This document shows positions 30,154 to 59,756 of a stretch of 64,000 nt of DNA, piece by piece. Where the stretch lies: assembly GCA_033442325.1 (NCBI GenBank), contig JAWQFM010000004.1, forward strand, positions 1,854,926-1,918,925, in the 5' to 3' direction. The number at the start of each line of letters is the position of its first letter. Within the stretch, counting starts at the first letter, position 1. Origin of the DNA: Salpingoeca rosetta (Eukaryota; Protista; Choanoflagellata). The notes below the pieces were generated by a model. That model did no database searches. It was not told where the DNA came from and worked only from the letters and a program-made list of their open reading frames with translations. Position numbers and translations under genes: made by a program.

Positions 30154-30235
30154 CGTGTGGCGCTGTAAGTTCGGAGTATTTGCAACTTGGTACATAATTT
30201 TCAGCACAATCCTGGAACGTGCTCACGCACAGCTG

Positions 30236-30237
30236 CT

Positions 30238-30269
<32 letters not shown>

Positions 30270-30293
30270 CACTCACACACACACACACTCACT

Positions 30294-30377
<84 letters not shown>

Positions 30378-30475
30378 AGCCCACACACACACTCACACAC
30401 ACACACTCACACACACACACACTCACTCACACACTCACTCATACACGCACACTCACACACTCACACTCACACACC
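30236..30475. repeat. (CA)n-rich microsatellite in the divergent ATP12/DUS intergenic region
   Basis: Direct observation; it fills most of the ~336 bp between the two start codons. Confidence 0.9.
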
Positions 30476-30489
30476 ACAGCCGCACTCCA

Positions 30490-37154: not shown

Positions 37155-40100
37155 TCACTGCATCAAGTAGTTGCGGAACTCCTTGAGCAGGGCATCGTCC
37201 ATCGCCTCCGCAGAGTACTCGTCCGGGGCGCAGTCGCACCGCGGCGGGTTCTGCTTCGCATGGTACTCGTCCGTGTGCTGCGTGCGGCGGCGGCGGTACA
37301 CGGGGGACGGCTGCGTCGCCGCCACCGTCTTGAAGCCAGCCTCCCGCACGGGCTTGACAGACTCAGCCGCTGGCTCCTCTCCAAACGACGTCTCCGCCTC
37401 CGCACTCGAGTCGTACAGCGGGTTGGAGAACACGCCGCCCGTCGGCTCGTGCAGCGGGTTGTCCGACGTCACCTGCCCAGAGCCCCACGTGTCGTTGTCG
37501 GTCGCACCGGCTGCCTCATCGCCCAGCAGATCGCCGGAGAAGCCCAGGTCCTGCTGCGGCTGCATCATCAGCGCAGCGCCGCCGTCGTCCTCCTCATCCG
37601 GGTCGGGCTTGTACAGCCAGTGCCGCTCCGCAGTGATGACCTTGGTCGTCGTCTGCGAGAAGCCCAGCTCGCTCATGCGGCCGTCCGAGCGGGCGCCCAT
37701 CAGCGGCGCGTTGACCGTCTTCAGCTCCTCCGTCGTCTTGTAGAAGAAGCGGTTCCCAGTCTCGTTGTCCACCTCGCCGCCAGAGAACGAAAACGTCACC
37801 GGCGCATCTGCACCGCCGTGCACGCGAATCTCGTCGTCCAGGTCCAGGCCCTTGCGGTGCATGATGTCCCGCAGCTCCAGCTCCCGCTCCTTGCTCTGCC
37901 GGCGGTGGCGCACAAGCAGCGCAATGATCAGCAGCACCGCAATCACGGGCACCACCACAGACACCACCAGCGTGCTGTCTGTCGATGACGACCGCGACGG
38001 CGTCGCCCCGTTCGTGTTGTCCTCAAACGTGCCAGACCGCAGCACGGAGAAGCCCAGCACCTGCGTCAGCGCGTCGGACTTGCCAAACCGAGACGCAAGC
38101 GCCTTTGCATCGTATGGGCCATAGAGGTCCGACAGCGGCACCGCAGGCGGCACCACCATCGCCGCCAAGTCGCTGTTGTTCACACCCATGTACTCTGGCA
38201 CAGTCGAAATCACGTGCACGCGCACAACCGTCTCTGTTGCGCGCCGTGCCCGCACCGGAACGCTGCTCACGCCGTCAAAGTTGAGGGTTACGTCGGCGTT
38301 TGTCAGCGTGTCGGTCTCCACAACAAGCACGCCCTCTGGGTCGAGGAAGATGCCCGCGTCCTTCAGGCCGAGGTGGCTCGCCAGCCGCGCCGCCACCAGG
38401 TCCAGGTTGGCCTGAATCTCAGCCAGCGACGCCTGGTCAAAGTCAATCGTCGCAAGCTGCAGCCGGTCGTACACCTCGACGTGCAGGTGGGCGTTGCTGG
38501 AAAGGCCGCCGCCATCCGTGGCCGTCAGCCGCACAACAGACTCCGGGGGGTGTGACCACGGGTTGGTTGCCGTCGTCACCCGGCCCGTCGTATCGTCCAC
38601 GGCGAACAGCGCCGTCGCATTCTGGCTGAACGTCACCTCGGAGAACGTGCCCAGGTCCGGATCCGTCGCGTTGACAAACGGCAGCACCTCCACTGTCACG
38701 TTGAAGGGGAGAAGGCGCGAGTACAGCGACGTGTCCACAAACGCCGGCGCGTTGTCGTTGGTGTCCAGCAGCGCCAGCTCAACCGTGGCAAACCCGACGT
38801 TGTTCCACGCACTCGAGTTGCTCAGCTCCGCCACAGACATGGGCGTCGCCGCCACCGCCGCCGTCAGAGCCTCAAGGTCGGATGCGTAGTTGCTTGTGGC
38901 CACCACAAGCTCAACGCCGTACATGGCCTCCCGGTCAAGGCGAACCGCGCCACTGCTGCCCAGGAACATCAGCTCACCAGATGTCGCGTTCATCGAAAAC
39001 CCGTCCAGCGGCAGCACGCCGCCCACGGCGCCAGACGAGGCAAGCAGGCCACGAGCAGACACAACCGCGTAGTACACGGGGTCCTCGCGCTCCGTGTCCG
39101 GGTCAGTCGCTGACAGCTGGCCCAGCAGCACATCCGTCTCTTGCTCCTCCATGACCTTGATCAGGTACTCGCTGCTGTCAAAGGCGGGCACGCCCAGGTT
39201 GAACTGCAGGTCCACGTACGCCACGCCGCTGGCAATCACGTCACCCGTGCAAGGGTTGGCCCACTGCGCCCGCACCAGCTCGCCCGAGCCGGCCGCAACC
39301 GCCGTCAGCGAGAACGGAGACGCGGGAACAAGCACGCTCTCGTTCGCAGATGACAGCGTCAGGCCCATCTCGCCGGTGATGGCCACGCGGTTGCCGTCGC
39401 CCAGAATGGCCTCCGTCACCACTAGCAGCGCGTCGCCCTCACGCGACACGGCCTCCTCCACCGTCAGCGCCGCCGTCAGGACGTTGCTGATGCCGGCCGA
39501 CGCAGGCGTCACCGTCAGCGACATGCGCGAGAAGGGCAGCACCACAAGCGAGAACACGTCAATCTCCGCGCTGTTCACCGTCAGCGTGAGCGTGTTGGAC
39601 ACAGCGCTGCCTCCAACCGTCGGCAGCGCAAGCGTGGTCGTGCCCGGCTGAAGCGCCCGCAGCTTGGAGCCCTCCAGCGCAATCACGCTCGAATCGCCCA
39701 GCACCAGCGCGTCCGCAAGCAACTCCGTTACGTCCGCACCGAAGGTGTCCTGTGCCGTGCCGCGAGAGAAGCTCGCTTCAACCAGCAGCGTGCTCGGCTC
39801 AAACACGGCCGGGTCGCCCGGGCAGGCGGCGCCGGCAATGGCAAACAGGGTAGTCGTCGTCGCAGAGATGCTGGCGGGCCCCGTCGGGTGCCACACGTCC
39901 AGCAGCGCCTCCGCAGACAGGCTGTCGTATGAGACGTCGACCACCGCACCCTGCTCCCCAGCCGCCGCGTTGGGATCAGCGGAGGCAGAGCAACCCGTCA
40001 GCACCAGCGCAGGGCTGGTTGATGTGCACGACACACTCGTGCTCACATCCACCACCGATGTCACGCTGGGGTTGGACCGCACGGCATATGTCTCAATCGT

Positions 40101-43100
40101 CGCCGCCTGGCTGCTGCCTCCGAGGGCAGCCAGGTTCAGCAGCGACGCGCGGGACGAGCCTGCAAACAGGCCGACGGCGTGGTCGCTCGGCAGCAGGTGG
40201 ATCACACCGGCCTCTTGCACGTGCGGACCGGAGCGGTCGACGCTCGAGCCAACACCGGCGGCGCGCACGCGCGAGCTGTCAATGCCAAGCAGCAGCGACA
40301 CGGAGGCAGACACCTCCGTCGTCGACGCCTGCATGTTGGTGCGGACCAGTGCCGTGATGGTGAACAGCAGCTGCGTCGTCGTGCTTGCCGTGCCATCCGT
40401 TCCAATCACCTGCACCGCTTCCTCACAGGGAGCGCCTCCAGAGATGGTGCGCGAAGCACACACCGGGTTGATGCTCGGCGTGTCGGCGTTGAAGGCCTCG
40501 TTCATATCCACGCTCAAAATGCGCAGCTCGTTCCCGAGCGTCACAGACGCAGTGAACGCGCCAATGCCAGACTCAGACCGCGCATACACGCCAATCTCAA
40601 ACTGCTCGTTCTCGTACAGCCCACGGGCTGGCAGCACAATCCACAAGTCCTCCGCCAGCACGTCCGTGTTGATGTTCACGTTGGACGGCACCAGCAACGC
40701 CGTCGTCTGCGCAGCCACAGCGCCGCCCGTGCCCTTGACACTGCCCGACGCTGTCACCTGCCGTGTCGACGTCGTCAGGAACCACGCTTCCGGCACGGTG
40801 ATGGACAGCATACAGATGCCGTTGAATGGCGCAGCGCTGTTGGCCGTGCACGACGCCGTCTTGCTCAGCGTCAGTGATCCGGACGGCGTGAACCGCACCT
40901 CCACCGTCGCCGGCTGCGTGTGCACCCTGTTCTCGCTATCCAGCACCCGCGCGGCAATGCGCAGCGTACGGTGCCCGCCGTGCTCAAGCACGTCCTGGTA
41001 CACGCGCTCGTCCACAACAAGCAGCTCGAGCTGCGCCGGCGCAGACGCCTCCACAGACACAGACTCCGTGCGCGTGAAGTTGCCCAGGCCAGCAACAACC
41101 TCAAAGCTGTCCCCAATGCTGGTGGAGTACAGCGGGCCCACGCCAAGCGCAAACTGCTGCAGACCGTCATCGGAAGACAGCAGCGTCTGGCCAGCCGCGT
41201 CAAACGGCGCGGCGCCCAGCGTCGAGAACGATGCCCGCTGTGTGTCTGCCAGAAGCACTTGCACCACCGTACGGGACGTCAGGCGCGTCGTGCCTGCGTC
41301 CTGCACAACAATCTCCACCTCAGACTGGCCCGCAGGCAGCGATGTCGCCGGTTGCGCCAGCACAAGCGCGCGCAAGTTCGTGTCGGTCGTCAAGCGCTGC
41401 AGCGTGAACAGGCTGGACACGGGGCCAAACGCAATCGAAAACGTCAGCTGCGCATTCACGCCAATGTCCGCATCCTCTGCGCCAATGTACACCACCGTTG
41501 CGCCAGCATCCGTGCCAGGATCAACGGCGCCTCGGTACGACGAGCGCGTAAACAGCGGGCGGTTGTCGTTGATGTCCTCAACCTCGATGGTCACCGTCAC
41601 GGTGGAGCTGAGCGAGGGAGTGCCAGCGTCTGCAGCCACCACAACAATCTGGTACTCATCCTGTGTCTCGCGGTCCAGCACCCGCTGCGTGCGCAGCTCG
41701 CCCGTTGTCGGGTTCAGCGTAAAGTCGCTCTGCGTTGTCACAATCGCAAGCGTCTGCAGCTGCGCATTCACACCAGCATCCGCATCCGTCACGGTCAGCA
41801 CGCCAACCAGGTCGCTGCCGGTGCCGTTCTCGGCAACAGAGAACGTGATGGAGGCGGCGCCAAACGATGGCGCGTTGTCGTTGATGTCTGTCAGCTGCAC
41901 AGTCACCGCAACAGAGGCGCTCAGGGCCGCACCAGCATCAACAGGCTGATCCGTGACAGTCACGGTGAACGAGTACGAGGCAGATTGCTCGCGATCAAGC
42001 CCGCTTGGCAGCGACAGCTCGCCAGTCACGGCATCAACAGCGAGGCGCGTGTCGTTGCTCGAGTAGCGAAGCACCGCGTTCGGGCCGATGTCTCTGTCCG
42101 TTGCAGCCACAAAACCGAGGGATGCAACAACCGACTCCTCATCCGCGGTGAACACGTAGGATGCACTGTTGAAGACAGGGGCGTTGTCGTTCGCATCGAG
42201 CACGAAGATTGTCACGTTCACAATGCGGTCAAACGTGGAGGAGCTAACGCGCATGGCGAGGTCGTACCGGTCGCGCGTCTCACGATCCAATGGAGCAGCC
42301 AGCTGGAACTGGGCCGTGGTTGGGTCAACGGTGAACAAGGTGTTGCCAGACCCAAACAGGTCGTAGTTGAGCACTGGCACAGACGTTGCACCATCAAACA
42401 CAGCACCGAAACCAACATTCAATGCAAAGTCCTCGGCAACAGAAAGCTCGATGCCCACGTCAAACAGATCACAGAGATCGCTGCGCATGGAGATGTCGAA
42501 GGTGGTGAAGGGGTTGTAGCCGGAGCCGCGGTAGAGGCCGGCACCAAGCGCGCCAACGCTCACATCAAGCAGGCCGCTAAACTTGTACGGCGGCACAGAG
42601 CTGCCGTCAAGGAAAAACTGCCGCGCAACATTCGTCACCCCGTTCACGTCCGTCGTCACAAGCACAAGCGACAGACCAAGGTCCGCAAGCACAAGCTCCG
42701 TGCGCACCCGCACCTCAAACACCCCGTCGCTGCCGTCCACAAGCTCCGCGCGCCAGTACCCGCCCAGGTACGACGCGCGCACACCAGACTCAACCGTAAA
42801 CGGCGCAGCCTCGCCGCGCTCAAACTCAGACGACAAAAACAGCCCCTGCGACGCTACATTCTCGTGCGCAATGTCAAAGTACAGCAGCGTCTGCGCAGCA
42901 TCAGCGGCAACGTCACCCTTCGCCCGCAGCCGCGCCCGGATCGTCAGCGAGCAGTTCGCCTCCGCATCCGTCACATCAAGCACCTCAACGTCGCTCACAA
43001 ACCGCAGCTGCCGGAAGTTCACCTTGGCCAGGTACGACGAGTCGCGCCCGTCAATCACCCCGTTCAGGTCAGCGTCCATCTGCGCCTCCTGCGTCCCGTC

Positions 43101-46100
43101 AGCAAGCAGCGCAGCCTCAAACGCCATACCCTCGGCGTTGCTGAAGCCGGTCGCAGCATACACAATGTACTGGATCGTGAACCGCACATCGCGCACATCG
43201 AAGATGCAGTTGCCATCGGCGTCACCCGTCTCGCGCGCACGTCCAGTCAGCGACAAGCACTGGCTGTCGTCGCACGGCGGGCTGTCGCACGTTGCGCGGC
43301 GCACACGGCGCTCGCCCGCCATCCACGACGTCGCCGACAATCCACTCTCAGCTCCACCCAGCTTCCTGCTGCTGCTACTGCTGCGACGGCGGCGTGCACC
43401 ACCAGACACAAGGAAGTCAAACGTGCCCGCAACAAACGAGCGGCCCTCGCTGCCAATCAGCACGCCATCCAAGTCGGCCATCGTCGTCACGCGCCCGCTC
43501 AGCATCAGCGCCTCTCCGCCACTCACAGTGTTCAGCACGCGGAACCGGATCACAGCAATCGTGTTCAGCCCAGAGATCCCGTTGCCCTCAAGCGCACCGC
43601 CAAACAGCACCTCGCCAGGCGGATCGTCCAGCGTCGGCACAAGCTGCGAGCTCGATGGCCAGTCAGACCCAGCCACCACAGACACAGCCTGCAGCTTGGT
43701 CGCATCATACAGCACCGTCAGGTCAATCGACCCAAGCTGCGTCGTCCCCGTGTTCACGCGCACGTCAACGTCAAACTCAGCCCCAGCGCTCACCGCGCTC
43801 ACCGCGGGCCCGCTCGTCGCGCCAAGGTCGACATCCTCAGCGGCCGGCGCGAGGTTGCAGAAGAACGTCGCCGACCCGCTCACGCCAACATCCGGCTGCG
43901 CAGTGGCAACAATCGTCACCGCCTCCGGGTCGTTCTGCAGCACCGTCACGCGGCCCGTGCTGCTGTCAACGCTCGCCGCGTCCGTGTTGTCCACGCTGAA
44001 GCTCAGCAGGTTCGGCACAGCAACAACACCGCCGCTCACAACGTTCGGGTACTCCGTGCCGTCGTCAAACCGCACGCCCACGCTCACGTCAGATGTCCCA
44101 ACGCCGGCAACCCCGCTCAGCGTGCTCACAAAGTTCACACGCCCGCTCACGCGCGCGCTGTTCAGCACAGCGCTCACAAACACGGGCGTTGTCCCAAGCG
44201 AAAGCCCCAGGTTGCTCGTGCTCGACGCACCCGCAAACGTGGCGCCCACAACCGCGCTGCCCGTCGTCGCAGATCCTGCACGCGACGCAATGCGCCCGCT
44301 CACAGAGATCACGCTGCCGCCAGACAGCACGCTGAACATGGTCAGCCCAGAGGACGACACGTCGCGCGTCGACCCGTCGGTCAGCGTCAGCACAAGGTTG
44401 AGCCGCGCCTGCTGGTACTCGCCCGTGAGCCCAATCGGCCGCAGCTCCGTCACCGCCCGCGACGTCGAGCCCGCGTAGGTCGGGAACGGCGACGCACTCA
44501 CAGTCACATCCTGCACCTGCACAACCGTCACATCCACAGACGCGGTGATGTTGGCGTGTGTAAACGAGACTGAGATAGTGGCCGTTCCGCTCTGTCCAGC
44601 GACAGGCACGACTTGCCGCGACCCGTCCGTGTTCACTTCAAGCGTCACCAAACCTGCAGGCGTGATGTCATACACCGTTCGGGAGTCGTTGGTGCGGTCT
44701 TGTGCGTCCTGGCCATAGATGAGGTCGACCTCAAGCCGAGTGGACGTTGCGACACCAGCGCTTGCGGCGACGCTGCCAGCGTCGGTCAGCGTGGTTGTGC
44801 CCACAGTGATATCTGCGGCGTCTGGAGCAGGAATGGTCACGGTGACAGCGGCAGTGGCCGAGGCAATGACCGTTTCGTTGTTGCACGTTGTTAGCCACCG
44901 CACAGAAACGAGGTCGCCGCTGCCACTGCCAAACGCGACAACGTTGGCGCCTTGCACGCGCACAGAGCCGGTGTTGAGGGACTCCGTCCTGAGCAGAACA
45001 TCTGCATCGTCAAAGCGCAGCGGCATGACTGCAAAGTCAGTGAACTCCGCTGCTGCGTAGATGACACCACTGTCGCCTTCCAGCGCAAACTCCTGCTGCA
45101 GGGAAGCCGTCGCAAGCAAGTTTGCGCCGACACTAATTGTGCCTGGTGCCGACAATTCGAGGGACGTCACCACGTTTGGCATCAGCCGCGAGACGGTGAC
45201 TGGGTCCGACGAAACCGTTACAGGCGTTGAGCCCACAACCTGCGCATCGGGTCGAACAATTTCAAGCAGGGCCTGCCCTGGAGCAGCACCTTCAACCATA
45301 CCATCAGCAACAGTCATCACAGTGGCGTTGCTGGACGAAAACAGGGCCGACACCAGCGAATCCACACGCACTTCCACGTCGCTCTGCGCATCATATGCAA
45401 ATGCAGCTGTGGCAGTGATGAAAGAGCGCTGGTATCGTTGGGCGCAGGCGTTGTTGGGGTCGAGCCAGTCCTGCACAGCGTTCAGCTCCGCATCCTCAAC
45501 CGTCACAGTCACAGGCAACCGCGGTGCCCACACGCGCACAGAAAACACAAAGCTCAGCGCGCCGCCGCCGTACTCAACTGTCACATCAACCTGTGGCGAT
45601 CGCCCGCCCACAGCACTCGTCAAGTCAACAGAGCTGCACCCTGCACCAAGCACAACAGCTTCCGTATCAGACACGCTGCACCCGCTCAGAGAGCCAGTCG
45701 ACAGCGTCCCAACACTGCCAGACCGGTACAGCCCGCGCACAGAGATGCTGCGGCTCACAGTGTCGCCCGTCAGCACAGCCGTGTTCACAAGCTCAGACTC
45801 TGCAACGTGCGCAAACAGCCCCACAACCGCATCCTCAGCAACATAAATGCCGCCAAAGCTTGCCGGCGCCGAGCTCACGCGCGTCAGCCGGTCCTCAAAC
45901 TCCATCGCCCCGTTGCCCGTCGGGAACAGGTCCTCCCCGCGCACGTTCGTCAGCTCCTCCACAACGCCGTCAATGCGCTGCACGGCATCCAGCGTCGCCG
46001 TGCTCAGCACATCAAACTCAATGCGCACGAGGTCCTCTGCGCTCACAGGCTGCGACGACGCCGTCGACGCATCCTGCAGCTGCCCAAACACCGTCCAGTC

Positions 46101-49100
46101 CTGGTCCGTCGTCGCCGTCGTCTGCAGCGAGAACTTGTCCGTGTTCACCGCCGTCACGCTGCGGATCCGCAAGCCAGACCCCGTCGTCACCTGCATCAGG
46201 AACGTGTCTGTCTGGAACCCGGCGTGGCCAGACACTGTGGCCGTCACCCGGTCCCCACGGAACGCCGTCCCAGACGGGATGCTCATGCGCAGCCCCTGCG
46301 ACACGTCGCTAAACTCACGCTGCCGACGCACGCGCACAGTGCCCAGCGACGTGTGCTCGGCTGTCGATTCCCCATTCAAGTACACAAACACCTCCACGCT
46401 CGGGTCCTCGGTCAGCGCAAGCAGCGACGAGTCCGTGAACCACGCCAGCGGCAGGTTGTCTGCCGTCACCGTGCACATACCCGTGCTTGTGCTCGAGCTC
46501 ACCGTGCAGCTTCCCGTCACCTCCGTGTTGCTGATGCCTGCCAGCGTTGCGTCGGGCACAACCCGCACGCGCACCGTGGCCCCGCTCACCCGCACGTTGA
46601 AGGTGCTGTCGCGGACCTGTGCTGCCACTCGGATGCGCCGGCTGCTCGCCCACACCTCCGTGTCCTGCACAGCACCCACGCGCGTCACAGCCGCTTGTCG
46701 AGGGCGCGAGTATGTCACGGAACTGGTCAGCTGCTCACCAAACGCCACTGAGAGATCTCCTTCACGGGTTGTGTCCATCGGTACAAATGCAGTGAGCGAG
46801 TGCTCAAAGACACCACGGATCGGTGATGTGTCCACGATCTCGGTTTCAATTTCTGCGAAGCCCATTCCCGTCACCGCAACGTCTGGCTTAAGACCCATCG
46901 TCGAGACGGTGGAGAGCGTGATGACCGTAAACCCGGTCCTGGGCGGGGTGCCATGGTCGGTGCCCTGCACCAGGATGGAAAAGAGCGATCCCCGGCCCTC
47001 AAGCACCACGGACGTGCGGATGACGCCTGTGTCTGGGTCGATATCAAAGATCTGCGCAACAACCTCATCCACAATCGAAAACGTGACGCGCGCGTTCTCA
47101 CCAGAGTCTGCATCATTGGCCGTGACGTTCGCCACAATGGAGCCAACTGGGAGCAGCGAGGAGATGTGCGGCTCAAAGTCTGCCACAAGAGCAGGCGCGT
47201 TGTCGTTGACATCGAGCACCTGCAACTGCATGGCAAACCTTGCAGACCGAGGCGGCGTTCCGTGGTCCGACGCCACCACGTCAAACGTAATCAACGCTGG
47301 GCCAGCATCATGGTCCAGTGGCTCCGCAACACGAACAACGCCTGTGGTCGCGTTCACGGAGAACTTGTTGGCCACGGACGGATCGCTGAAGTTAGCCAGG
47401 GAGAAGGTGATGCGAGCGTTGTCGCCAATGTCGCCGTCGGTAGCGCTGACGGTTGTCAGCACCGCAACCTGCCGCTCGACAAGAGAGAACTCGTGGTCTG
47501 TGTTCTGAAACACGGGCGTGTGGTCGTTGGCATCCACCACTGCGATGTTCACTGTAAGGTCAGTGGAGAGCGGCGACGCAGAGCGACCAAGCGTCGTGTT
47601 GTATCGTGGCGTGTAGAGGGGGCTACTGTCGCTGGCTCGAAGCGTGATCGTGTACGAATCCACGTCTTCGCGATCCAGAGGCCGCGTTGTGTTGAGAGCA
47701 CCAGTCACGGGGTCAATCGTAAAGATGCTTTCGCTGTTACCCGCGACAATCTCAAAGAGAATGGCCGCGTTGAAATCAACATCGGCGTCTGTGACCGGAA
47801 TGAACGACACCAACGCGCCAGCTGGCAGATTCTCCGTAATGTTCAGCGGCTGGGGCAAATGCTCAAACACAGGGGCGTGCGTGTTCACATCATACACCGT
47901 GACTATCACAGAGGCGAACGAGTGCAGCGGAGACGCAGCCAGGTCCTGCCCGCGCACGGAGATGTTGAGCACAGCCCACTCGCCCTGCAGAGGCACGAAC
48001 GGCTGAGCCAGAACAATTGTGCCGTTCTGCGAAATGTTGAAACGGTTGTCCGGGTTGTTGGCAAGCGTCAGCTCCACAGTCCCGCGAACGCCCGAGTCCG
48101 CATCTGACACGTTCACCACCGCCACAACCGAGCCCACAGCAAGCGTATCAGGAAGCAGTGCCTCATACCCATCGGGGGTAAACTGAGGCGCATTGTCGTT
48201 GTCGTCCATGACGGAAATCATCACAGATGCAGTCGAGGACAGCGGCACAGGTATTCCCAAGTCGGTCGCAGTCACAGTCAGTGCGTACGACATCGTGGTC
48301 TCATAGTCGAGTGGCTGCTGAATGCTGATGGTTCCCAGCATTGCGTCAATGGAAAACCGCCCTTCCTCGTTACCGCCAGTGATGGAGTATCTCACTTCAC
48401 CACCAACGCCGGTGTCCGCATCAGAGGCAATCAGCTGCGTGAGCACCTGTCCAACAGGCGTCAGCTCAGGCACGGAAATCACGACAGTGTCGCGCACGAA
48501 CACAGGTGCATTGTCGTTGGCGTCCGAGATGCTCAGCGTCAGCGTGAAGGTGATTTCCTGCTCGCTCACGCCGTCCACAGGAACAACGTTGCGCGCCGAA
48601 ACGGTGATGAGGTAGTTGTTGACCACTGTGCGATCAAAAGTCATGGCGTTCAGCAGCTCGCCAGAAGTGGTGTTCAACGCAAGGGCATCGGGAGCGGCAA
48701 CAGGCACAGAACCACCCACGGGCGTAGCAAACACAGACAAGAGGCGGAAGGTGACCTCCGAGTACACATCCGTGTCAGCGTCGTCAGTCTCAAACGTGTA
48801 CACAACAGAGCCCATCGGCGCATTCTCAGGAACTTCCGCGCTTGCTGCGCTCACGAAGAACGGCAGGTTGTCGTTCTCGTCTGTGATCGTAATCACCACA
48901 AACGCCGTCGCGTTGAACGTGCCATCCGTGACAGTTGCTGTCAAATTGTATGAAGGCACCGACTCCCGGTCTGTGGGAAGGGAGGACGTTGTCACAACCC
49001 CCGTTGATGGATCAACAGAAAAGTGTTCGGACCCATTGCCAGACAAGGCGTAGGTGAACGAGGTGCTGTCAATGTCATCGACGGACAGCTGAACAATAAA

Positions 49101-52100
49101 AGCACCAGCTGCCGAGTTCTCCGCGACTGATCCGGTGAAGACTGGCATGGCAAAGAAGACTGGGATGTCGTTCACGTTGACGACGACAATGTCGACAACG
49201 GACGTCGCGCTGCGCTGCGTGCTCACGCCCTGATCGCTCGCCTCAACCACGAGCCGGTACGACGTGTTCCGCTCATAGTCAAGCGCGCCCTCAAGCACAA
49301 TCTCGCCGCTCGTGGCGTTGATTGAAAACAGGCCGCTCGAGTTGTCAGACACAAGCCGGTACTCGAGCGTCCCGCTCGCAGCAGCAACCGCAATCCCGCC
49401 GTACTCAGACCCAGGCACATACCCGAGATCCTGGTCCGTCGCGTTCACGTCAACAACAACCATCCCAACCTCCGCCGTCTCAGACACAGGCACCGTCAGT
49501 GACGCAGGCGCAAACACGGGCGAGAAGAAGTTGAAGCACGTGCCCGTTCCGCGCGTGTTGTCAAACTTCATGTTCGGGCTGTACCCGCCCGACAGCGAGA
49601 TGGTCACGTCGTCAAACGCCAGCGACAGCGCGCTCCCGTAGTCGTACGGCGGTAGCGGGCTGCCAAACACAGCCAGCGTGCGCGCAGGCAGCGTGTTCAG
49701 CTCCCCATCAAGCGTCTTCTGGATCGGGCTCAGCCCAATGCCGCTCAGCTCAATCGGCGTGTACAGCGACACCTGGTACAGCCCGCCCCCGATGCTCGCA
49801 GCCTTCACAATGCCGCCAAAGTGCCCGCTGCCCTTGTTCGTCACAACAACCTCGCCCACAGCGGCCGTGCTCGCGTCAAACGCGGCCTGGAACGCGCTTC
49901 CGCCCTGCGCAGACGTCGCAGCAAAGTCAAAGTAAACCTCCGTCTGCCCGTTCGTGTCAGCCGTGTCACCGGCCTTGAGCACCTCCGCAATCACTGTCAG
50001 CTGGCACCCGTCCGTGTCCTCAGCAACAGTCGTCACGCTCACGTTGCGCACAAACCGCAGCTGCCGGAAGTTGATGCGCGCAAGCACAGACGTGTCCGTC
50101 GGGTCGATCACCCCGTTCAGGTCAACGTCCATCGCATCCAGCTGGAAGTCCTGCAGCGCCGCCTTGATGTTCCCACCGCGCACAGTCGAGAACCCGAAGA
50201 TCTCCTCAGTCAGATACACCTGCAGGAACGCAATGTCGTCCAGGTCAAAGATGCAGTCGCCGTTGGTGTCACCGCTCTGTCGCCGCCCGCCGCACTGTGC
50301 CTCCGTGCACGGCGCCGTCGCGCTGCACTTGGTCGTCACTACGTCCGACGCCCGCCGCACGCGCGCGCTCTCGCTCGCATCGTACCCGGCCAGCCCACCG
50401 CTGCTGCTGCGGCGGCGACGCGCCGTGTCCGTTCGCAGATCGCCAGAAATGAACGCGCGCGGCGACGTCCCAGACGCAGCCGGGCTGCCAATGTCGGTCA
50501 CCGATCCGTCGTTGGCCAGCGTCGTGCCCATCTTCTTCGTCACACCGTACAGCTCAATCACGCCCGTCCCGACAACCTGGAACTGGATCGTCGCCAGGTG
50601 GTACGACGTCGACGCAATCCCGTCCTCGGTCACGCCGCCCAGCAGAATCGTCCCGACAGGGTCGTTCAGCGTCTTCACAAACGTGCCACCGGGCCACGTC
50701 GCCCCAGGCACAACGTCCACCGGCTCAACAATCGATGCGTCGTAGTACACCTCAAGGTCAACGCCACCCAGCACCAGCGATCCCGTGTTCACATACACGT
50801 TCACATTGCGTGTGCCGCTGCCCGTCGCAGGCGCAACAGGAACACCAGTCTTGGAGCCAAGGTCAACGTCGCCAATGGCAGGCGCAAGGTTGCACGCAAA
50901 CGCCGTGCTCCCGCTCACCCCGCCCGCATCCACCGCCGTCGCCGTCACGGTCACCGTCTCGTGGTGGTTCGCAAGCAGCGTCACCTCGCCAGTCGTGCTG
51001 TCCACAGACGCCACCGCGGTGTTGTCCAGGCTGAACGTCACCAGGTTGTCAAACTGCCGGTTGCCCGAGCTGTCAAACACAGACTCGTACCGCGTCCCGT
51101 CGTCAAACTCAACCCCGAGGCGCACAAACGCGCTGCTCGTGCCGCTCTGGCCGCTCAGCGTGCCAACAAACGACACCCGTCCAGTCTGCCGGTTCTCGTT
51201 CAGGATGGCGCTCACAAGCACAGGCGTCGACGTCAGCGTCACCGTCACCGTGTTGTCTGCCTCAAGCCCGGCGTGCACAGCAGAGATGACAACGCTGCCG
51301 CTCGTGCTCGCGCCGTCCCGCGCAACACGCCGCCCGCTCAGCGCCAGCCCCACGCCGCCCACAATGCTGTAGCTCGTCGATCCAGATGGGCTCACGTCGC
51401 GCGTCACGCCGTCTGTGCCCACGAGCTTCAGCTCCAGCTCAGCCTCCTGGTACTCGCCCGTTCCGGAGAGCGCGTTCAGCTCGTCAGCAATGTCGCTCGC
51501 CGACCCAGCATACGAGGGATACGGCCGCGGCACAAGCGTCGCCGTCGACACACCCACAACCTGCACGCTCACCGTCGCCGTCACGCCAACGTGCGTGAAC
51601 GACACGCCGAGCACGCCCGTGCCCGTCAGCCCAGCCGTGTTCGCAACCACAAGCGGCACAGGGCCACTGCGGTCAATCGTGAACAAGCCGTTGCTCTGGC
51701 TCAGGTCATACACCGTGCGGTTGTCGTTGCTGCGGTCAAGCCGCGTGCTGCCGTATACGAGCTCCACAGTCACCGCCGTCGACGTCGGGAACACGTTCGT
51801 GTCCGCAAACGGGCTCGGCAGCCCAGGCGCGCTCGGGTACGTCACCTTCGCGTTCGCCACAGTCATGCTCACAGAGTCGGGGTCCACCAGCGACACGTTC
51901 ACAAAAGCCGTGCCCTGCGCAAGCACCCCAAATCCGCAGCCCGTCGACGGCTCCCACTGCAGCCGCACCAGGTCGCCCGCGCCGTTGCCAAACGCAGCAA
52001 CCTTGTTGGTGTCCGTCACAACAACCGTCGACCGCGCCTTGCTCGTCAGCGAGAGCCCCATCGCCGGCGTCACCTCAAGGCTCGCGCCATCAGAGAACGT

Positions 52101-55100
52101 CACAGCCGCAAACACGTCCGCTTCCTCCTCTTCAACATCAAGCTCCTGCAGCAGCGTCAGCCGCGCCGTCTGCTCGCTGTCCGTCGAAAACGATGTGCTG
52201 GACAGCGTCAGCTCCGCGCTCGTCAGCGCAAGCCCGCGCACGTAGCTCGCGTTCACAAACCCGCCGCCAACAGCCACTTCCACAAAGCCAGCAAGCCGCC
52301 CGCCCGCGTTCAGCGTCACGTTGGCAACGCCGGCTCCCACGCCGCGCACCATCAGCCCGTCCACGCTCGCAACGCCGCCGTCGCTCACGCTCAGGTGCCC
52401 GTCCACAACGTCGTTCACCACAACCTGCTTCGCAGGCCCGCTCGGCGAGTACCGATATGTCGCAACAGCCTTCACCCGCCCGCGCTGGTACTCCTGCGCA
52501 CACGTGCCGCTCGTCATCCAGCCGTACACAGGCGACAGCTGTGCGTCGTTCAGGCCCAGCGAAATCGGAAGCTCCGGCGCCCACACGCGCGCCCGCACAA
52601 CCGCCTGCTCCCCGCTGCTGACGTGCTGCACAGTCACAGCCACAAGCCCGCTGCCCTGCGTCGTCGTCGCTGCGCGAAGCTCCAGCCGGTTGCAGCTGCT
52701 CCCCACAGCAACCACAGACGTGTCGTCGCTGCTGCAGCTCAGCCCGCTCGAAAGCGTCGACAGCGCGCCCTGCCGGTTCAGCTGCTTCGTCGTCAGCGTC
52801 ACCGTCTGCGTCGACCCGTCCAGCACAGCCGTGTTCACAAGCTCTGCCTGCGCCAGGTAGCTGAACACAGCCGTCACAGGGTTCGAGGCAACATACACCG
52901 TGCCCGTGCCCTCGTGCTCACCAAGCCGGTCAACCACGCGCCCAGGCACAGGGCTCAGCACAATCGGCTCGTTCAGGTTGCGCAGGAACTTGATCTGCAC
53001 CGTCAGGCTGTGCGTCGTGTCCAGCGCCGCGCTCGATCGCGCGCGCATCGCAACACGAACCAGCTCCTGCGCGGCAACCTCAACTGTCGGCAGCCCGGCC
53101 TCGTTGTCGTGGTTCGCAGACAACCCAGCGGACAGCCCGCCGTCCGTCACAAGCGGCGCCGCCCGCCACGTCCCAGAGTCAAAGTTGATGCTCAGAATCT
53201 CAAGGTCGCTGCTCACGTCAAACTGCAGCGTAAACGCCGTCACAGGCAGCGTCGCGTCACCATACACAACGGCCTCAAACGTCTCCCCAACAAACACAGG
53301 CCGCAGCGGCATCTGCACCTGCACATCGTTGTTCGTCGGGCTGCTGCTCGCAGTGATGCCAAACGTCGGCTGGTACCGCAGCGTCACATCCCCGGCAGAC
53401 GTCAGCCCCGTCCGCTCATCGCTGAACCCGTACTGCACCTGCACAACCTGGTCCCCAGACACAACTGTGTCAGAGAACCACGACGCCGGCACCGTCACAG
53501 ACGCCGTGCACATCCCCGTCGCCGTGCCCACCTTGCACGACCCGACCAGGTTCGACGCGCCAGCCGCAGACGCAAGCTCGCTCGTCGGAACAACGACAAT
53601 CTTCACATACGTGTTCAACTCAACACGGCTGCTCCACAGCTCGTCCCACACCTGCAGCACCGCCTTCACAGTCCGGTCGCCGTCCGCGTACAGCTCGGTG
53701 AACGCCAGCGTCGCCGACACCTGCGTTGCACTGCGCCGCTGCGTCGAGTACGACACGCTGTTCGACGTCAGCGCGCTCCCCAGGTACGCACGTACACTGC
53801 CGCTGCTCCCAACAGCAGCGTTGTTGAACAGGGTGAGCTTCTCATCAAACTCGAGCGTTCCGACGAGAGCTGTGGAGCCCATGGGATAGCCGACCGCAGT
53901 TGTTGAGAACGAAATTGGCATGGGATCTGTGACGAAGATTGTGAGCATGACGGAGCTTGACTTGGCATTGAGCAAGCTTCCTTCGTCCTGCACCCACACG
54001 GCAAGCTCATACAGGGTTTGGGTTTCCCGCGAGAGCTGGCCGTTCACCCGCAGCTCGCCCGTGGTTTCGTCCAGGCTGAAGGCGCCATCTGGCGTTGTCG
54101 ATGCGCCGCCCTGGAAGTAGAAGCGGAAGCCCTGGTTGCAGCTGTCTTGATCTGTTGCATTGAACCGCACCACCACTGTGCCAACGACAGAGTCCTCGGG
54201 AACAAACTGAAAGTAGCTGTCCTGCGAGAACTGTGGGGTGTAGACGTTATCGTCCAGGATGGTCACGAGCACCGACGCATCTGCGCTTCGGCGGTAGCCG
54301 TTGAAGTACCTGCACCCCTGACGACAGATGCTGCTTGTGCACAAGGTCTCGCACTGGGCGAGCGTCGATGAGGTGTTGCCGTGCACGCAGCCTTGCTTGC
54401 ACCCGTCAAACGACTCGCCCGTGCTGAGAAACAGCAGGTGGCAGCGGTCGCTGCACTCGCTGACGGTGCCGTTCGGGTTATCCGTGACACGCACCCCAAA
54501 CGTGACTGTGTCAACGTTGTCGGTACAGAACTGCCCGTTTGTTGTGACAACGCCAGTGTCTGGGTCGATGTTGAAGCGGTCCGAGTCTGGGCCGTCGAGG
54601 ACGGAGAAGGTGAGGCGTGCGTTCTCGCCGGCATCCAGGTCAAACGCGCTGCCCACAAGCACGTTGTCTGTGACTGGGTCGCGGGTTTCCGTGAACCCAA
54701 ACCCGTATGCGGTCGACTTTGTAAACTGGGGGGTTTCGTCGTTCATGTCGCCAACCTGCACGAGGACGCGGGTGGTGGAGGAGAGCTGGGGGTGGCCGCT
54801 GTCCGAAGCACGCACGTACACGTTGTACTGGGGAACGGTGAGGGTCTCGCGGTCCAGCACATCTGCAGTGAGGAGAAGGCCCTGTGTTGGTTCGATCAGG
54901 AAAGGGCTGCTTCCAACAATGGAGTAGGTGACGGTGTGCTGGGCCGGGTTGCCACGATCCTGGTCCGTTGCGTTGACTTGAACAAAGGCAATGTTGAGCA
55001 GGTCGTTCTCGTACACCTGTGCGGTGTAGAGGTCCTTCTCAAACACCGGCGGGAACTCGTTCACGCCAAACACAGTCACAATGACGTGGGCCACAGAGGA

Positions 55101-58100
55101 CAGTGGCGGAGAGCCGTTGTCCTCCGCGACAAGCGTGACGTTGAAGGACGAGTACTGTTCACGGTCAATTGTGCGCTGGAGCTCAAAGCGCAGGTCCGTG
55201 GTGAGCTTGAACTTGCGGGGGCTCACGTCGCCACCTGCAATGACAACGCTCACGTCGGAGTTGTTGCCGCTGTCGGCATCGGTCACCTCAATCTGGGCAA
55301 GCAGCGAGTTTGCTGTCTTGTTCTCAAAGATGTCCACGTAGTACGTGTCCTGGGAGAAAATGGGGCGGTTGTCGTTGATGTCGTTGATGTTGATGGTGGT
55401 CGTGGCCATCTGCATCCTGGACGGCGTGCCGTGGTCCCGTGCAACAATGACCAGCGTGAGCTCATGGAGCTGCTCGTAGTCAAACCCGGTGGCGTTGGCG
55501 ATGTACAGCTCGCCCGTCGCGTTGTTGATGTCCAACAGAACGTGTCCGCCTGGCCCGCTGTTGCCACTCTGAATGCTGTAGGTGACGAGCGAGTTTGGCG
55601 TGTTTGGCTCATCAGCGTCTGTGGTATTGTACGTGGCAACGACGGTGCCCTCCGGCGTGTGCTCATCGACGCTGAGCTCAGCGAAGGGGGCCACAAAGGT
55701 GGGTGTGTTGTCGTTGACGTCGACCAAGTTCACGGTGACTTGCGTGAAGTTGGAGAGGCCGCCGCCGTCGGTCACGTTGACGTCCAGCGTGAACGAGCGG
55801 ACAACCTCAAAGTCAAGGGCTGTTTGGTCCATGGTGGTGAGGATGCCCGTGGTTGCGTCGAGATGGAACGGGGTGCCCAGGTCAGACGTGAGCGGATCGA
55901 TCAGGGTGAAGGTGAGGCGGCCAAAGCTGCCAGAGTCTGCGTCCGTGGCGTTGATCTGGGCGATGATGGTGCCACCCAGCGTGTTTTCGCGAATGGTGCG
56001 CGTGACGGGCGGGTGCAGCAGCTGTGGGTAGTTGTCGTTTTCATCCAGCACAATGACGTCGACGCGGGCTGTGGAGTTCATGGGTGGCACACCGTGATCG
56101 ATTGCCATGACGGTGATGTTGTAGCTGGTGGTGCGCTCATAATCCAGCGGCAGACTGCTAACAAGGGACATGCCTTCAATGACAAAGCCGCCAGCCTCGT
56201 TGCCACCAACAATGCTCAGTGTGTAGTTTCCGTTGTCACCGGAGTCTGCGTCGGAGACGTTGAAGGTGACAATCGACGTGTGCGGCGCCATGTACTCAGA
56301 CACGCGACGAATGTGCAGTGGCTGCGCAAACAACGGCGCGTTGTCATTTTCGTCTGTGATCCACACGTACACGGGATGGGTGATGTTGAAGCCGCCGTCA
56401 GACACCTGCACGGTGTACGTGTACTCCTGAACGAGCTCGTAGTCGATACTGGTGGCGAGAGTGATGACACCTGTGCTCGGGTTGATGGAGAAGGGCATGC
56501 TCGATTCCAGGATGGAGTATGTCAGCGTTGCGAACATTGGGTGAATGTCGGGGTCCGTGGCTGAAATGTTGAGGATGGTGGAGGAAACCGGAGTGGCCTC
56601 CGAAATGGTGGCATTGAACAGGACGAAGGGATCAAAGGCCGGCGTCTCGTTGATGTCCGTGATGTTGACGAGCACGGTGGTGGTGACGTTGAAGGCGCCA
56701 GGGTTGACACCGTTGTCAGACACAACAACCTCAAGCGTGTACGATGTCACGCTCTCATAGTCAAGCTCAGCCTTCATCACAACAACGTGGCCAGTCCCGT
56801 TGATGGAAAACAAGCCGTTCACATTCGTCGCAGGTGTGATCGTGTACGTCAGCACGTTGCTCGGCGCTGTCACATCTGCATCGCTCGCAAACACGCGGGC
56901 CGCAACATGACCGGCACCAGCAGACTCAAGCACCTCATACACATCAACGTTGTTGATCACAGGCGTCTCGTCGTTCAGATCCTGGATGTGCACCGTAACA
57001 ACAAGGTCTGCGCCCTCAGACGACAGGCTGGGGCTTCCGCCGTCGGTCGCCCGAATCACAATCGTCTCCGTCGCGCTGTACTGCTCAGCATCCAGTGCCA
57101 CCAGCGACACCAGGTTGCCGTTGCCGTCGAGCCCAAACGCGCTCGGGGCGGTGGTGTTGTGGATGCTCAGTGACACCACGGCGTTGTCGCCGCTGTCTGC
57201 GTCAGACACGTTCACCGGCACGCTGAAGCTGCCGCCATCAAGCACCGTCGTCTCGTACGCCGTCTCCGCAAACACAGGCGGGTTGTCATTGATATCTGTG
57301 ATTGTGACTGTGACGACGGCACTGTCCTGCTCGAAAAAGTCGCGAAGCGGGAAGACGATGACGCTGACCTCGTAGTAGTGTGTGCCTGGATAGGGGAAGT
57401 TTGTGGCCTCGTAGTCCAGCGGGGCGTTGATGGAGAACACGCCCGTGATGGCGTTAACGGCAAAGGCCTTTTCGCTTGCCGGGCCCGGGTTACCACCGGT
57501 GATGGAGAAGATGTTGTCGACAGAACCCTGCTCAATGTCAGCGTCGGTGATGGTGAAGGTGACGATGGCAGTGCCGACGGTGGCGTTCTCCGGGACGGTC
57601 ATGGCCCAGCGCGGCTGCGTGAAGAAGGGCGGCAAGTCGTCGACGTTTGTGATGTTCACGTAGACGGCCACCTCGCTGCTGCGCGGGATGTCTGGGTGGT
57701 TGTCGGTGGCGTTGACGACAAACACGTGCACGGTGGTGGTTTCGGCGTCAAAGGACTGCCGGGTGGTGATGGCGCCCGTGGCAGCGTTGATGGCAAAGGG
57801 GACGCTGAGGGGATCACGGATGCGGTAGGTGACCAGGGCCCCCTCGTCCATGTCGATGGCCAGGACAGTGCCGACGGCCGTCCCGGAAGCGGCGTTCTCC
57901 TCCACCTGGAAGATGTACGGCGAAGCGGTGAAGGTGGGCGCGTCCTTGTTGGGGACGCCCTTCAGGACGGAGATGGTGAGGTTGGCCGTGCCCATGAGCG
58001 GCGGCGTGCCTTCGTCGTACGCAAGCAGCTCCACGTGATGCTGCGGCACAAGGGTGCTGTTGAGGGTGCCGTTGAGGACAACAAGGCCCGTGTCGTCGAT

Positions 58101-59656: not shown

Positions 59657-59689
<33 letters not shown>

Positions 59690-59695
59690 TGTGTG

Positions 59696-59756
<61 letters not shown>

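What the first reader, a model, noticed from the sequence alone, without database searches (positions are those of the whole stretch)
43395..50351. Middle fragment is a dockerin...cohesin bifunctional unit that could polymerise head-to-tail
Inference from the architecture. Cleavage would give fragment A (17 EC-TMEM132-cohesin 1), fragment B (dockerin 1-8 EC-TMEM132-cohesin 2) and fragment C (dockerin 2-4 EC-TMEM132-2 EC-TM). B has a plug at one end and a socket at the other. If dockerin 1 also binds cohesin 2, B can chain into filaments of variable length, anchored by C and capped by A, or swap between neighbouring cells or microvilli. The cohesin-like domain inside each TMEM132 module could add branch points. 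This would be a candidate building block for collar links or colony matrix.
Basis: inference. Interest (0 to 1): 0.8.

Follow-up and report, generated by a model that had tools for sequence, protein, structure and literature searches.

The report
Giant cadherin with cohesin-dockerin snap joints
A 7,500-residue surface cadherin of the choanoflagellate Salpingoeca rosetta holds two bacterial-type cohesin-dockerin pairs, each split by conserved protease-cutting sites, so it is probably cut into three pieces that stay clipped together in order; self-chaining of the middle piece is possible but not favoured by the evidence.

Summary
Window 43395-50351 (minus strand) is exactly the stretch between the RVRR site after cohesin 1 and the RRRR site after cohesin 2 of one 7,562-codon exon, the S. 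rosetta 'FAT3 protein' XP_004996428.1. This piece reads dockerin 1, 8 cadherin repeats, a TMEM132 module and cohesin 2.

The cohesin, double dibasic site, Cys motif and dockerin cassette is a conserved unit. I found 212 full copies in 143 related proteins, and 47 proteins carry 2-4 copies. AlphaFold2 with a 72-cassette alignment folds cassette 1 as one docked unit (pTM 0.85), with both cut sites in a floppy loop. The strongest covariation in the whole alignment links cohesin strand 6 to dockerin helix 3.

The most likely reading is that the protein is cut by a convertase and stays as an ordered 1:1:1 A-B-C chain, held by pre-formed cognate clasps.

Head-to-tail polymerisation of B is not supported. 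The two cassettes are old paralogues with clade-specific residues at the classical recognition position. In a covariation-based proxy, the ends of B score like non-cognate pairs.

It is not excluded either. Some relatives carry near-identical tandem units whose middle pieces must be self-compatible.

Cleavage and binding remain untested. The scan already described this cassette on another piece of this genome (s1-433367).

The parts
37158..59516 (-). Main coding exon of the giant cadherin (ORF residues 110-7562; equals XP_004996428.1 residues 101-7553). The signal peptide and N-terminus lie in upstream exons.
50421..50879 (-). Cohesin 1 (ORF 2989-3141), a nine-strand type I cohesin fold and the C-terminal end of fragment A.
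   Evidence: Pfam Cohesin 28.2 bits; AF2 pLDDT 90-97; VIA Z 14-15 to 6kgc_A and 1ohz_A
50352..50420 (-). Linker 1: RRRR (ORF 3142-3145), a 15-residue spacer, then RVRR (ORF 3161-3164). Two convertase-type sites in a low-confidence loop.
50052..50351 (-). Dockerin 1 (ORF 3165-3264): a Cys motif (C-x6-C-x4-C, plus a Cys inside loop 1), two calcium loops and three helices. It is the N-terminal end of fragment B.
   Evidence: Pfam Dockerin_1 18.7 bits, below cut-off; profile hits to solved dockerins; AF2 pLDDT 94-98
49494..50051 (-). Conserved beta-rich domain after dockerin 1 (ORF 3265-3450), with an invariant Cys. Its first strands are modelled as part of the docked unit.
46908..49493 (-). Eight cadherin repeats of fragment B (ORF 3451-4312).
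44898..46283 (-). TMEM132 module 2 (ORF 4521-4982): cohesin-like domain plus Ig domains 4-6.
43395..43844 (-). Cohesin 2 (ORF 5334-5483), the C-terminal end of fragment B.
   Evidence: Pfam Cohesin 51.5 bits
43296..43394 (-). Linker 2: RRRR (ORF 5484-5487), a 25-residue spacer, then RVRR (ORF 5513-5516).
42999..43295 (-). Dockerin 2 (ORF 5517-5615), the N-terminal end of fragment C. Both calcium loops are canonical; 51% identical to dockerin 1 in the aligned columns.
51936..53558 (-). TMEM132 module 1 (ORF 2096-2636), in fragment A.
39201..41120 (-). TMEM132 module 3 (about ORF 6242-6881), in fragment C. No cohesin-dockerin cassette follows it.
37911..37970 (-). Transmembrane helix (ORF 7292-7311), followed by a cytoplasmic tail of about 250 residues.

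Best explanation
The gene encodes a coherin-type giant cadherin built as a segmented rope.

In the secretory pathway each dockerin folds onto the cohesin that lies about 70 residues upstream on the same chain. It uses the canonical calcium-dependent type I interface: the cohesin sheet formed by strands 8-3-6-5 against dockerin helices 1 and 3.

A furin/kexin-type convertase then cuts both ends of the exposed linker (RRRR and RVRR) and removes a spacer of 15-25 residues. The protein reaches the surface as an ordered, non-covalent A-B-C chain in 1:1:1 ratio. A is 17 cadherin repeats, a TMEM132 module and cohesin 1. B is dockerin 1, 8 repeats, a TMEM132 module and cohesin 2. C is dockerin 2, 4 repeats, a TMEM132 module, 2 repeats, the transmembrane helix and the tail.

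Chain length is set by the number of cassettes in the gene, not by self-assembly of B. The joints would act as strong, calcium-dependent, breakable and possibly re-closable links.

Shown here: the domains, the conserved sites, the transcript, the predicted docked fold and the covariation. Inferred: cleavage, binding, order of events and function.
For: 1. Domain identity.
- Both cohesins pass Pfam's cut-off.
- The AF2 model aligns to type I cohesins at Z 14-15, rmsd 2.1-2.4 A over about 130 residues.
- The cassette profile hits solved dockerins first.
- Of 72 cassettes, 58 match Pfam Cohesin and 26 match Dockerin_1.

2. Cis docking.
- With a 72-cassette alignment, AF2 gives mean pLDDT 86.9 and pTM 0.85 for the 316-residue cassette. 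The linker is the only weak part.
- My inference: a pTM this high needs cohesin and dockerin placed confidently in one frame. With 7 sequences the pTM was 0.45.

3. Covariation.
- The strongest pair in the whole alignment is inter-domain: cohesin G85 (strand 6) with dockerin F275 (helix 3). G goes with F in 117 cassettes, and V/L goes with A/V in 23.
- The next pair links cohesin G122 (strand 8) with dockerin repeat-1 position 11.
- Of the 21 cohesin columns in the top 25 pairs, 13 lie on strands 3/5/6/8 (p 0.005), and the dockerin partners lie on helices 1 and 3.
- Cohesin against the post-dockerin domain shows no pair above 0.13.

4. Cleavage sites.
- They are present in both cassettes and lie in low-pLDDT loops.
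- Across 212 cassettes they are enriched at both anchored positions: R-x-K/R-R in 43-62% against 0.7-1.7% background.

5. Cassette number varies between relatives, and 47 proteins carry 2-4 copies.

6. Precedents.
- Bacterial cohesin-dockerin pairs withstand more than 120 pN (PMC6030884).
Against: - No protein-level evidence of cleavage or binding exists here or in the papers I could search.
- Model coordinates and PAE were not available, so the docked geometry is inferred from pTM only.
- The phylogenetically independent test of the best covarying pair is underpowered: about 3 pairs go the same way, none the opposite way, p about 0.25. It gives no support for cohesin column 45 with dockerin position 11.
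- Dockerin 1 is below Pfam's cut-off and dockerin 2 is not hit at all.
- 74 of 212 cassettes lack a strict R-x-K/R-R motif in the linker. Among the cassettes that could be anchored, about a quarter lack even a dibasic site at a given position. One diverged cassette (P0003, third copy) has lost both the sites and the Cys motif.
Confidence: 0.6

Rival explanations
1. One reading: after cleavage, dockerin 1 of one B binds cohesin 2 of another B. B units then chain head-to-tail into filaments of variable length, capped by A and anchored by C, or swap between cells.
For: - B carries both a plug and a socket.
- The two cassettes share the same type at the strongest covarying pair, G with F.
- The dockerin second repeat and helix 3 are very similar in the two cassettes, and dockerin identity is 51%.
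- The Coh2 x Doc1 score of -12.5 still lies above 19% of true cis pairs.
- Relatives exist whose middle units must be self-compatible. P0058 has three tandem 5,043-bp units at 99.1-99.4% nucleotide identity in a chromosome-level assembly. P0004, P0033 and P0072 have 100% identical cassettes.
Against: - The cassettes are old paralogues with their own orthologues.
- The classical recognition position differs by charge: D in dockerin 1 (N/D clade) against R in dockerin 2, whose clade has R/K in 10 of 12 members.
- Family-wide, 'dockerin n x cohesin n+1' pairs score like random pairs.
- Every site has a cis partner at very high local concentration before cleavage, and the precursor supplies A:B:C at 1:1:1. 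Each B-B link would therefore leave an A and a C unpaired, or paired with each other.
- From general knowledge: bacterial scaffoldins that carry both module types (for example CipA, with type I cohesins and a type II dockerin) use orthogonal specificities and do not self-polymerise.
Confidence: 0.08
2. The cassette is not cut. Cohesin and dockerin form an intramolecular latch on an intact chain. The latch would be a folded hinge that opens under force and releases the linker as slack, and the basic motifs would serve another role.
For: - The docked cis unit is predicted with the linker intact.
- 74 of 212 cassettes lack a strict furin motif.
- One diverged cassette keeps the two domains without the sites.
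Against: - Two dibasic motifs sit at fixed places, directly after the last cohesin strand and just before the Cys motif. They persist across cassettes whose spacers are otherwise unalignable. They are 12- to 90-fold enriched over background.
Confidence: 0.12
3. Cleavage releases the pieces.
For: - A second S. rosetta protein carries a cassette of the same broad clade: P0105, named 'notch-1', F2UEM4.
- The earlier scan note s1-433367 reports many copies in this genome; I did not check this.
- Coh1 x Doc2 scores within the cis range, at -5.5.
Against: - Cis pairs are clearly distinguished from non-cognate pairs family-wide (p 1e-44).
- AF2 docks the cis pair confidently.
- Pre-formed high-affinity pairs would exchange slowly; this is general knowledge of type I pairs, not tested here.
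Confidence: 0.12

Closest known systems
Bacterial cellulosome type I cohesin-dockerin pairs (for example C. thermocellum 1OHZ); adaptor scaffoldins that carry both module types
   Same: - The same two folds.
- Duplicated calcium loops in the dockerin.
- Covariation puts the interface on cohesin strands 3/5/6/8 and dockerin helices 1 and 3.
- Position 11 of the repeat behaves as a specificity position.
- Fragment B resembles an adaptor scaffoldin, with a plug and a socket on one polypeptide.
   Different: - Eukaryotic, and part of a cadherin.
- Both partners are encoded next to each other on one chain and are separated only by proteolysis.
- Extra disulfide-type Cys motif.
- A longer insert between the two repeats.
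- The two repeats are not symmetric, so a dual binding mode is unlikely.
- No enzymes are attached.
Fat/FAT1 'classical processing' (furin-type cut, non-covalent heterodimer); also Notch S1, GAIN and SEA modules
   Same: A giant adhesion receptor is cut in the secretory pathway and held together non-covalently (PMC3953070).
   Different: - Here the clasp is a recognisable cohesin-dockerin pair.
- There are two cuts per joint and two joints per protein, up to four in relatives.
- No laminin G or EGF domains were found by Pfam, so the database name 'FAT3' reflects cadherin repeats only.
Coherin family of choanoflagellate and sponge cadherins (Nichols et al. 2012, as cited in PMC6030884)
   Same: Cadherin repeats plus a Pfam cohesin domain plus TMEM132-type modules, in a choanoflagellate.
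   Different: - The papers I could read mention the cohesin only.
- PMC6030884 states that dockerin homologues are not detectable in vertebrates and does not describe dockerins or cut sites in coherins.
- The original paper was not held, so I cannot say whether the dockerin was noted there.
TMEM132 family
   Same: Three complete TMEM132-type modules lie inside the protein (PMC6030884).
   Different: Their cohesin-like domain is only remotely similar to the cassette cohesins (hhalign probability 8%). No dockerin follows them.

Membership tests
Cohesin (PF00963, type I fold) | Score above Pfam's gathering cut-off | tested here: met
   28.2 and 51.5 bits against 24.1; 58 of 72 relatives match
Cohesin (PF00963, type I fold) | Nine-strand jelly-roll fold | tested here: met
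   AF2 model with nine strands; Z 14-15, rmsd 2.1-2.4 A to 6kgc_A, 1ohz_A and 2vn5_A
Dockerin type I (PF00404) | Score above Pfam's gathering cut-off | tested here: not met
   Dockerin 1 scores 18.7 bits against 22.9; dockerin 2 has no hit. 26 of 72 relatives match at E<=0.01.
Dockerin type I (PF00404) | Two 12-residue calcium loops (D/N at positions 1, 3, 5, 9, 12), each followed by a helix | tested here: met
   Both loops are intact in both dockerins. Three helices at pLDDT 94-98. Profile hits to 4fl4_A, 8ajy_B and 1ohz_B span both repeats.
Cohesin-dockerin complex | Direct calcium-dependent binding of the two modules | not testable with these tools
   Indirect support only: pTM 0.85 for the cis unit, and inter-domain covariation on the canonical faces. 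Phylogenetic control is underpowered.
Proprotein-convertase substrate | R-x-K/R-R motif in an exposed, conserved position | tested here: met
   Four motifs in two linkers, in low-pLDDT loops. Enriched at both anchored positions over 212 cassettes.
Proprotein-convertase substrate | Actual cleavage in the cell | not testable with these tools
   No proteomic data were found.
Self-polymerising head-to-tail unit | The dockerin at one end of the unit binds the cohesin at its other end | tested here: inconclusive
   Proxy score Coh2 x Doc1 is -12.5, against about 0 for the cis pairs. This is the 19th percentile of cis pairs and the 76th of random pairs. Clade-specific charge difference at position 11.
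FAT-type cadherin (database name 'FAT3') | Laminin G and EGF domains between the cadherin repeats and the membrane | tested here: not met
   No such Pfam hits at E<=0.01 over the whole protein.
Coherin cadherins | Cadherin repeats with a cohesin domain and TMEM132-type architecture, in choanoflagellates or sponges | tested here: met
   definition taken from PMC6030884, as the original paper was not readable

The most novel reading that the evidence does not exclude
The cohesin-dockerin joints are exchangeable. After rupture or slow dissociation, dockerin...cohesin middle units re-pair in trans. In lineages with near-identical tandem units (P0058, P0004, P0033, P0072), and in S. rosetta if dockerin 1 tolerates cohesin 2, they would form chains of variable length or links between microvilli or cells. 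That would be a eukaryotic, cellulosome-like, self-assembling and self-healing adhesive polymer.
Probability: 0.1. Interest if true: 0.85.

Novelty: new variant of a known kind. Interest (0 to 1): 0.6.

Why it matters
If the cut-and-clasp reading is right, choanoflagellates, the closest living relatives of animals, build their largest adhesion proteins as chains of segments joined by a bacterial-type, calcium-dependent, very force-resistant clasp.

- It would be a new way of making a 'cleaved but tethered' receptor, alongside Fat, Notch, GAIN and SEA modules.
- It would be a eukaryotic use of cohesin-dockerin pairing, with the dockerin partner that the one TMEM132/coherin paper I could read (PMC6030884) does not describe.
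- It offers a natural set of more than 200 co-evolving cohesin-dockerin pairs from which a specificity code could be read.
- It makes testable whether such joints act as mechanical fuses or as regulated release points in the collar or in colonies.

For the specific claim given to me, the value is mainly negative. The evidence points to ordered cognate joints rather than free polymerisation of the middle piece.

Tried and rejected
- AF2 with only 7 cassettes gave a poor model (pLDDT 57, pTM 0.45). It was replaced by the 72-cassette run.
- No model coordinates or PAE are delivered, so I could not list interface contacts or check the G85-F275 contact in 3D.
- A direct test of dockerin 1 with cohesin 2 was impossible. 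The fold tool takes one natural chain of at most 1,200 residues, B has 2,323 residues, and chimeras are not accepted.
- treekit independent-pairs tests were too weak to reach significance, and gave no support for cohesin column 45 with dockerin position 11.
- A strict search for specificity-determining positions in the three-cassette subfamily gave few sites: 7 in 57 dockerin columns and 2 in 135 cohesin columns. This is suggestive only.
- Nichols 2012 and Peer 2009 are not held. Accession searches found no paper on this protein.
The shorter relatives come from unnamed ENA metagenome assemblies, so I could not tell whether any cassette-bearing relative is from an animal.
- The low-GC stretch at 18-20 kb is only an assembly gap.

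Full report
**What is there**

The window holds one uninterrupted reading frame of 7,562 codons on the minus strand, 37155-59843. Over the stretch tested, from ORF residue 110 (P0001 residue 101) to the C-terminus, it is identical to the Salpingoeca rosetta protein XP_004996428.1 / EGD82245.1 / F2U3Q1. That protein is automatically named 'FAT3 protein', has 7,553 residues, and its N-terminus comes from upstream exons. ORF residue i starts at window base 59843-3(i-1). P0001 numbering is ORF numbering minus 9.

An HMM built from the protein's own repeats finds the following:
- 16 cadherin repeats at ORF 226-1969, plus a probable N-terminal one;
- 8 at ORF 3451-4312;
- 4 at ORF 5813-6198;
- 2 at ORF 6895-7124.

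Pfam adds three TMEM132 modules and a cohesin. A transmembrane helix lies at ORF 7292-7311. The coordinates 43395-50351 are exactly A3165 to A5483: from the residue after RVRR of linker 1 to the residue before RRRR of linker 2.

**The cassette**

ORF 2057-3439 and 4402-5794 align end to end at 35% identity. In both copies the order is as follows:
1. a cohesin;
2. RRRR directly after its last strand;
3. a spacer of 15 or 25 residues that does not align between the copies;
4. RVRR;
5. a Cys motif;
6. two 12-residue calcium loops with D/N at positions 1, 3, 5, 9 and 12, each followed by a helix.

Taken alone, cohesin 1 scores 28.2 bits and cohesin 2 scores 51.5 bits, against a cut-off of 24.1. 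Dockerin 1 scores 18.7 bits against 22.9, and dockerin 2 is not hit. So by Pfam's own threshold the dockerins are not members.

However, a profile of seven cassettes hits solved dockerins first: 4fl4_A at 2e-4, 8ajy_B, 4dh2_B and 1ohz_B at 3e-3, across both repeats. It then hits solved cohesins. Of 72 related cassettes, 58 match Cohesin and 26 match Dockerin_1.

**Expression**

Three stranded RNA runs of the same species cover 47000-52900 continuously at low depth. The first mates lie on the + strand, as expected for a minus-strand gene. There is no joint, so linker 1 is part of the mRNA. The reads and contigs show a few base differences and an in-frame 3-base deletion at 48988 relative to the window.

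**How widespread**

A profile search of 1.84 billion representative proteins gave 3,657 hits at E<=1e-3 and 256 at E<=1e-30. In the best 150 plus the three proteins found earlier, I found 212 full cassettes in 143 proteins. 96 proteins have one, 26 have two, 20 have three and one has four.

Named sources are choanoflagellates: S. urceolata, Hartaetosiga gracilis, and a second S. rosetta protein, 'notch-1' F2UEM4. Most others are unnamed ENA assemblies.

A strict R-x-K/R-R motif lies in the linker of 138 of 212 cassettes. I anchored site 1 to the end of the cohesin and site 2 to the Cys motif, and compared with random windows of the same proteins:

| Position | [KR]R | Background | R-x-K/R-R | Background |
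|---|---|---|---|---|
| Site 1 | 78% | 6% | 43% | 1.7% |
| Site 2 | 74% | 3% | 62% | 0.7% |

The median spacer between the two sites is 21 residues. The double cut site is thus a conserved feature of the family, not a chance feature of this gene.

**Do the two halves of a cassette bind each other?**

With 72 cassettes as alignment (A2), AlphaFold2 models cassette 1 (ORF 2985-3300) at mean pLDDT 86.9 and pTM 0.85. All five models score 85-87. The cohesin is at 90-97 and the dockerin at 94-98. Only residues 138-190, which hold both cut sites, are weak.

The cohesin makes up half of the chain. A pTM of 0.85 therefore requires the dockerin and the start of the next domain to be placed confidently against it. 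This is my inference, because coordinates are not delivered.

The cohesin part aligns to type I cohesins at Z 14-15, rmsd 2.1-2.4 A.

Independent of the model, mutual information with average-product correction over the 212 cassettes shows the following:
- The strongest pair of the whole alignment is inter-domain: cohesin G85 (strand 6) with dockerin F275 (helix 3). G goes with F 117 times, and V or L goes with A or V 23 times, a size-compensating pattern.
- The next pair joins cohesin G122 (strand 8) to position 11 of dockerin repeat 1.
- Of the 21 cohesin columns in the top 25 pairs, 13 lie on strands 3, 5, 6 and 8 (p 0.005). Their partners lie on helices 1 and 3.
- By established knowledge of 1OHZ-type complexes, this is the canonical interface.
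- Cohesin against the post-dockerin domain gives no pair above 0.13.

Caveat: a test on phylogenetically independent pairs is underpowered. About 3 go the same way and none the opposite way, p about 0.25. It does not support cohesin column 45 with position 11.

**The claim under test: can B polymerise?**

It needs three things: cleavage, free ends, and binding of dockerin 1 to cohesin 2. Only the last could be approached here, and only by proxy.

First, in a tree of the 212 cassettes the two S. rosetta cassettes fall in different clades. Cassette 2 groups with Hartaetosiga P0037 (support 0.98) in a clade of 12. Cassette 1 groups with P0045 (support 1.0) in a clade of 8. The duplication therefore predates these species.

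Second, position 11 of repeat 1 is N or D throughout the cassette-1 clade and R or K in 10 of the 12 members of the cassette-2 clade. By established knowledge, positions 10 and 11 set the species specificity of bacterial type I dockerins. In the three-cassette subfamily each position also keeps its own conserved helix-3 signature across 9-10 representatives.

Third, I built a log-odds compatibility score from the top 25 inter-domain pairs, leaving out relatives above 45% identity:

| Pair class | Median score |
|---|---|
| Cis pairs | -4.9 |
| Random non-cognate pairs | -20.3 (p 1e-44 against cis) |
| 'Dockerin n with cohesin n+1' of the same protein, i.e. the two ends of a middle fragment | -16.0 (p 7e-13 against cis) |

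For S. rosetta:

| Pair | Score |
|---|---|
| Cis pair, cassette 1 | 0.43 |
| Cis pair, cassette 2 | -0.07 |
| Cohesin 2 with dockerin 1 (the ends of B) | -12.5 |
| Cohesin 1 with dockerin 2 | -5.5 |

This proxy carries shared ancestry as well as binding. In addition, 19% of true cis pairs score below -12.5. It therefore disfavours cross-binding without excluding it.

Fourth, by simple reasoning, each precursor delivers A, B and C at 1:1:1, with every site already facing its partner on the same chain. B-B links could arise only by exchange, and each would leave an A and a C over.

By established knowledge, bacterial scaffoldins that carry both module types use orthogonal types and assemble hierarchically rather than polymerise.

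Some relatives carry very recent tandem duplications of the whole dockerin...cohesin unit:
- P0058 comes from a chromosome-level NCBI assembly (GCA_041296205.1). It has three 5,043-bp units at 99.1-99.4% nucleotide identity, each with its own cassette and dibasic sites.
- P0004, P0033 and P0072 have cassettes 100% identical in protein. For these an assembly artefact is not excluded.

In such proteins the ends of a middle fragment are necessarily cognate. Self-compatible links therefore do occur in the family, at least transiently in evolution.

Trans re-pairing of cognate ends after rupture would need no cross-reactivity at all. That would mean A of one molecule pairing with B of another.

**Branch points and localisation**

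The TMEM132 cohesin-like domains align with the cassette cohesins in register but only weakly (hhalign probability 8%, pairwise E 0.004). Nothing suggests that they bind these dockerins.

I found no data on where this protein sits in the cell.

**Comparison and novelty**

The nearest known systems are:
- type I cohesin-dockerin pairs of cellulosomes;
- the furin-type 'classical processing' of Fat cadherins into a non-covalent heterodimer (PMC3953070);
- the coherin family of choanoflagellate and sponge cadherins, known for its cohesin and TMEM132 modules (PMC6030884).

In the searchable literature I found no description of dockerins or convertase sites in these cadherins. The key 2012 paper could not be read.

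The scan itself has already described the same cassette on another piece of this genome (s1-433367), so the cassette is not new to the scan.
- the family-wide statistics;
- the confident docked model;
- the inter-domain covariation;
- the multi-cassette 'segmented rope' picture;
- the tandem-unit relatives;
- the test of the polymerisation idea.

**Verdict**

The best explanation is an ordered, convertase-cut A-B-C chain held by cognate calcium-dependent clasps, at confidence about 0.6. Cleavage and binding still need to be shown at the bench.

Noticed in passing
window 38241-38252 (-), ORF 7198-7201: A fifth furin-type motif (RARR) lies about 90 residues outside the transmembrane helix, with no cohesin or dockerin around it. 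It could be a shedding site for the whole ectodomain. Its conservation was not checked.
   Followed up: no
window 46323-46334 (-), ORF 4504-4507: RVRR lies just before TMEM132 module 2, inside fragment B. There is no such motif at the matching place of module 1. It may be chance or an extra cut.
   Followed up: no
window 59517-59843 (-): The first 109 codons of the long ORF are intron-like: CA-dinucleotide repeats that read as runs of T-H. The annotated protein joins upstream exons at ORF residue 110.
   Followed up: partly
window 19455-19972: A run of N (assembly gap). It explains the apparent low-GC block at 18-20 kb and the stack of overlapping ORFs at 19.2-20.3 kb, which are artefacts.
   Followed up: yes
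window 34198-35424 (-): An ORF of 409 residues has a DDE_1 endonuclease domain (E 7e-25). It is a pogo/Tigger-type transposase remnant or copy, 1.7 kb downstream of the cadherin gene.
   Followed up: no
window 10545-15102 (-), 24892-25836 (+), 30187-31791 (+), 1376-5152 (+): Neighbouring genes are clathrin heavy chain, a cyclic-nucleotide phosphodiesterase fragment and a dihydrouridine synthase. There is also a 1,259-residue ORF with a Big_13 Ig-like hit.
   Followed up: partly
window 48988 and about 13 single bases in 47000-52900: RNA reads and contigs of other runs of the species differ from the window by an in-frame 3-base deletion and a dozen substitutions. These are strain or allele differences, not editing as far as can be told.
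   Followed up: no
L003:4651-18993 (NCBI GCA_041296205.1, CM083862.1): A relative without Pfam cadherin hits (TMEM132 Ig domains only) carries three tandem 5,043-bp units at 99.1-99.4% identity, each ending in a cohesin, dibasic sites and dockerin cassette. The organism was not identified.
   Followed up: partly
P0105 residues 6062-6335 (S. rosetta F2UEM4, 'notch-1'): A second S. rosetta giant protein carries one cassette of the same broad clade, so cross-talk between proteins of one cell is a real question.
   Followed up: no
P0003 residues 6874-7140: A degenerate third cassette in a 7,960-residue relative has lost the dibasic sites and the Cys motif but keeps cohesin-like and dockerin-like halves. 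It may be an uncut joint.
   Followed up: no
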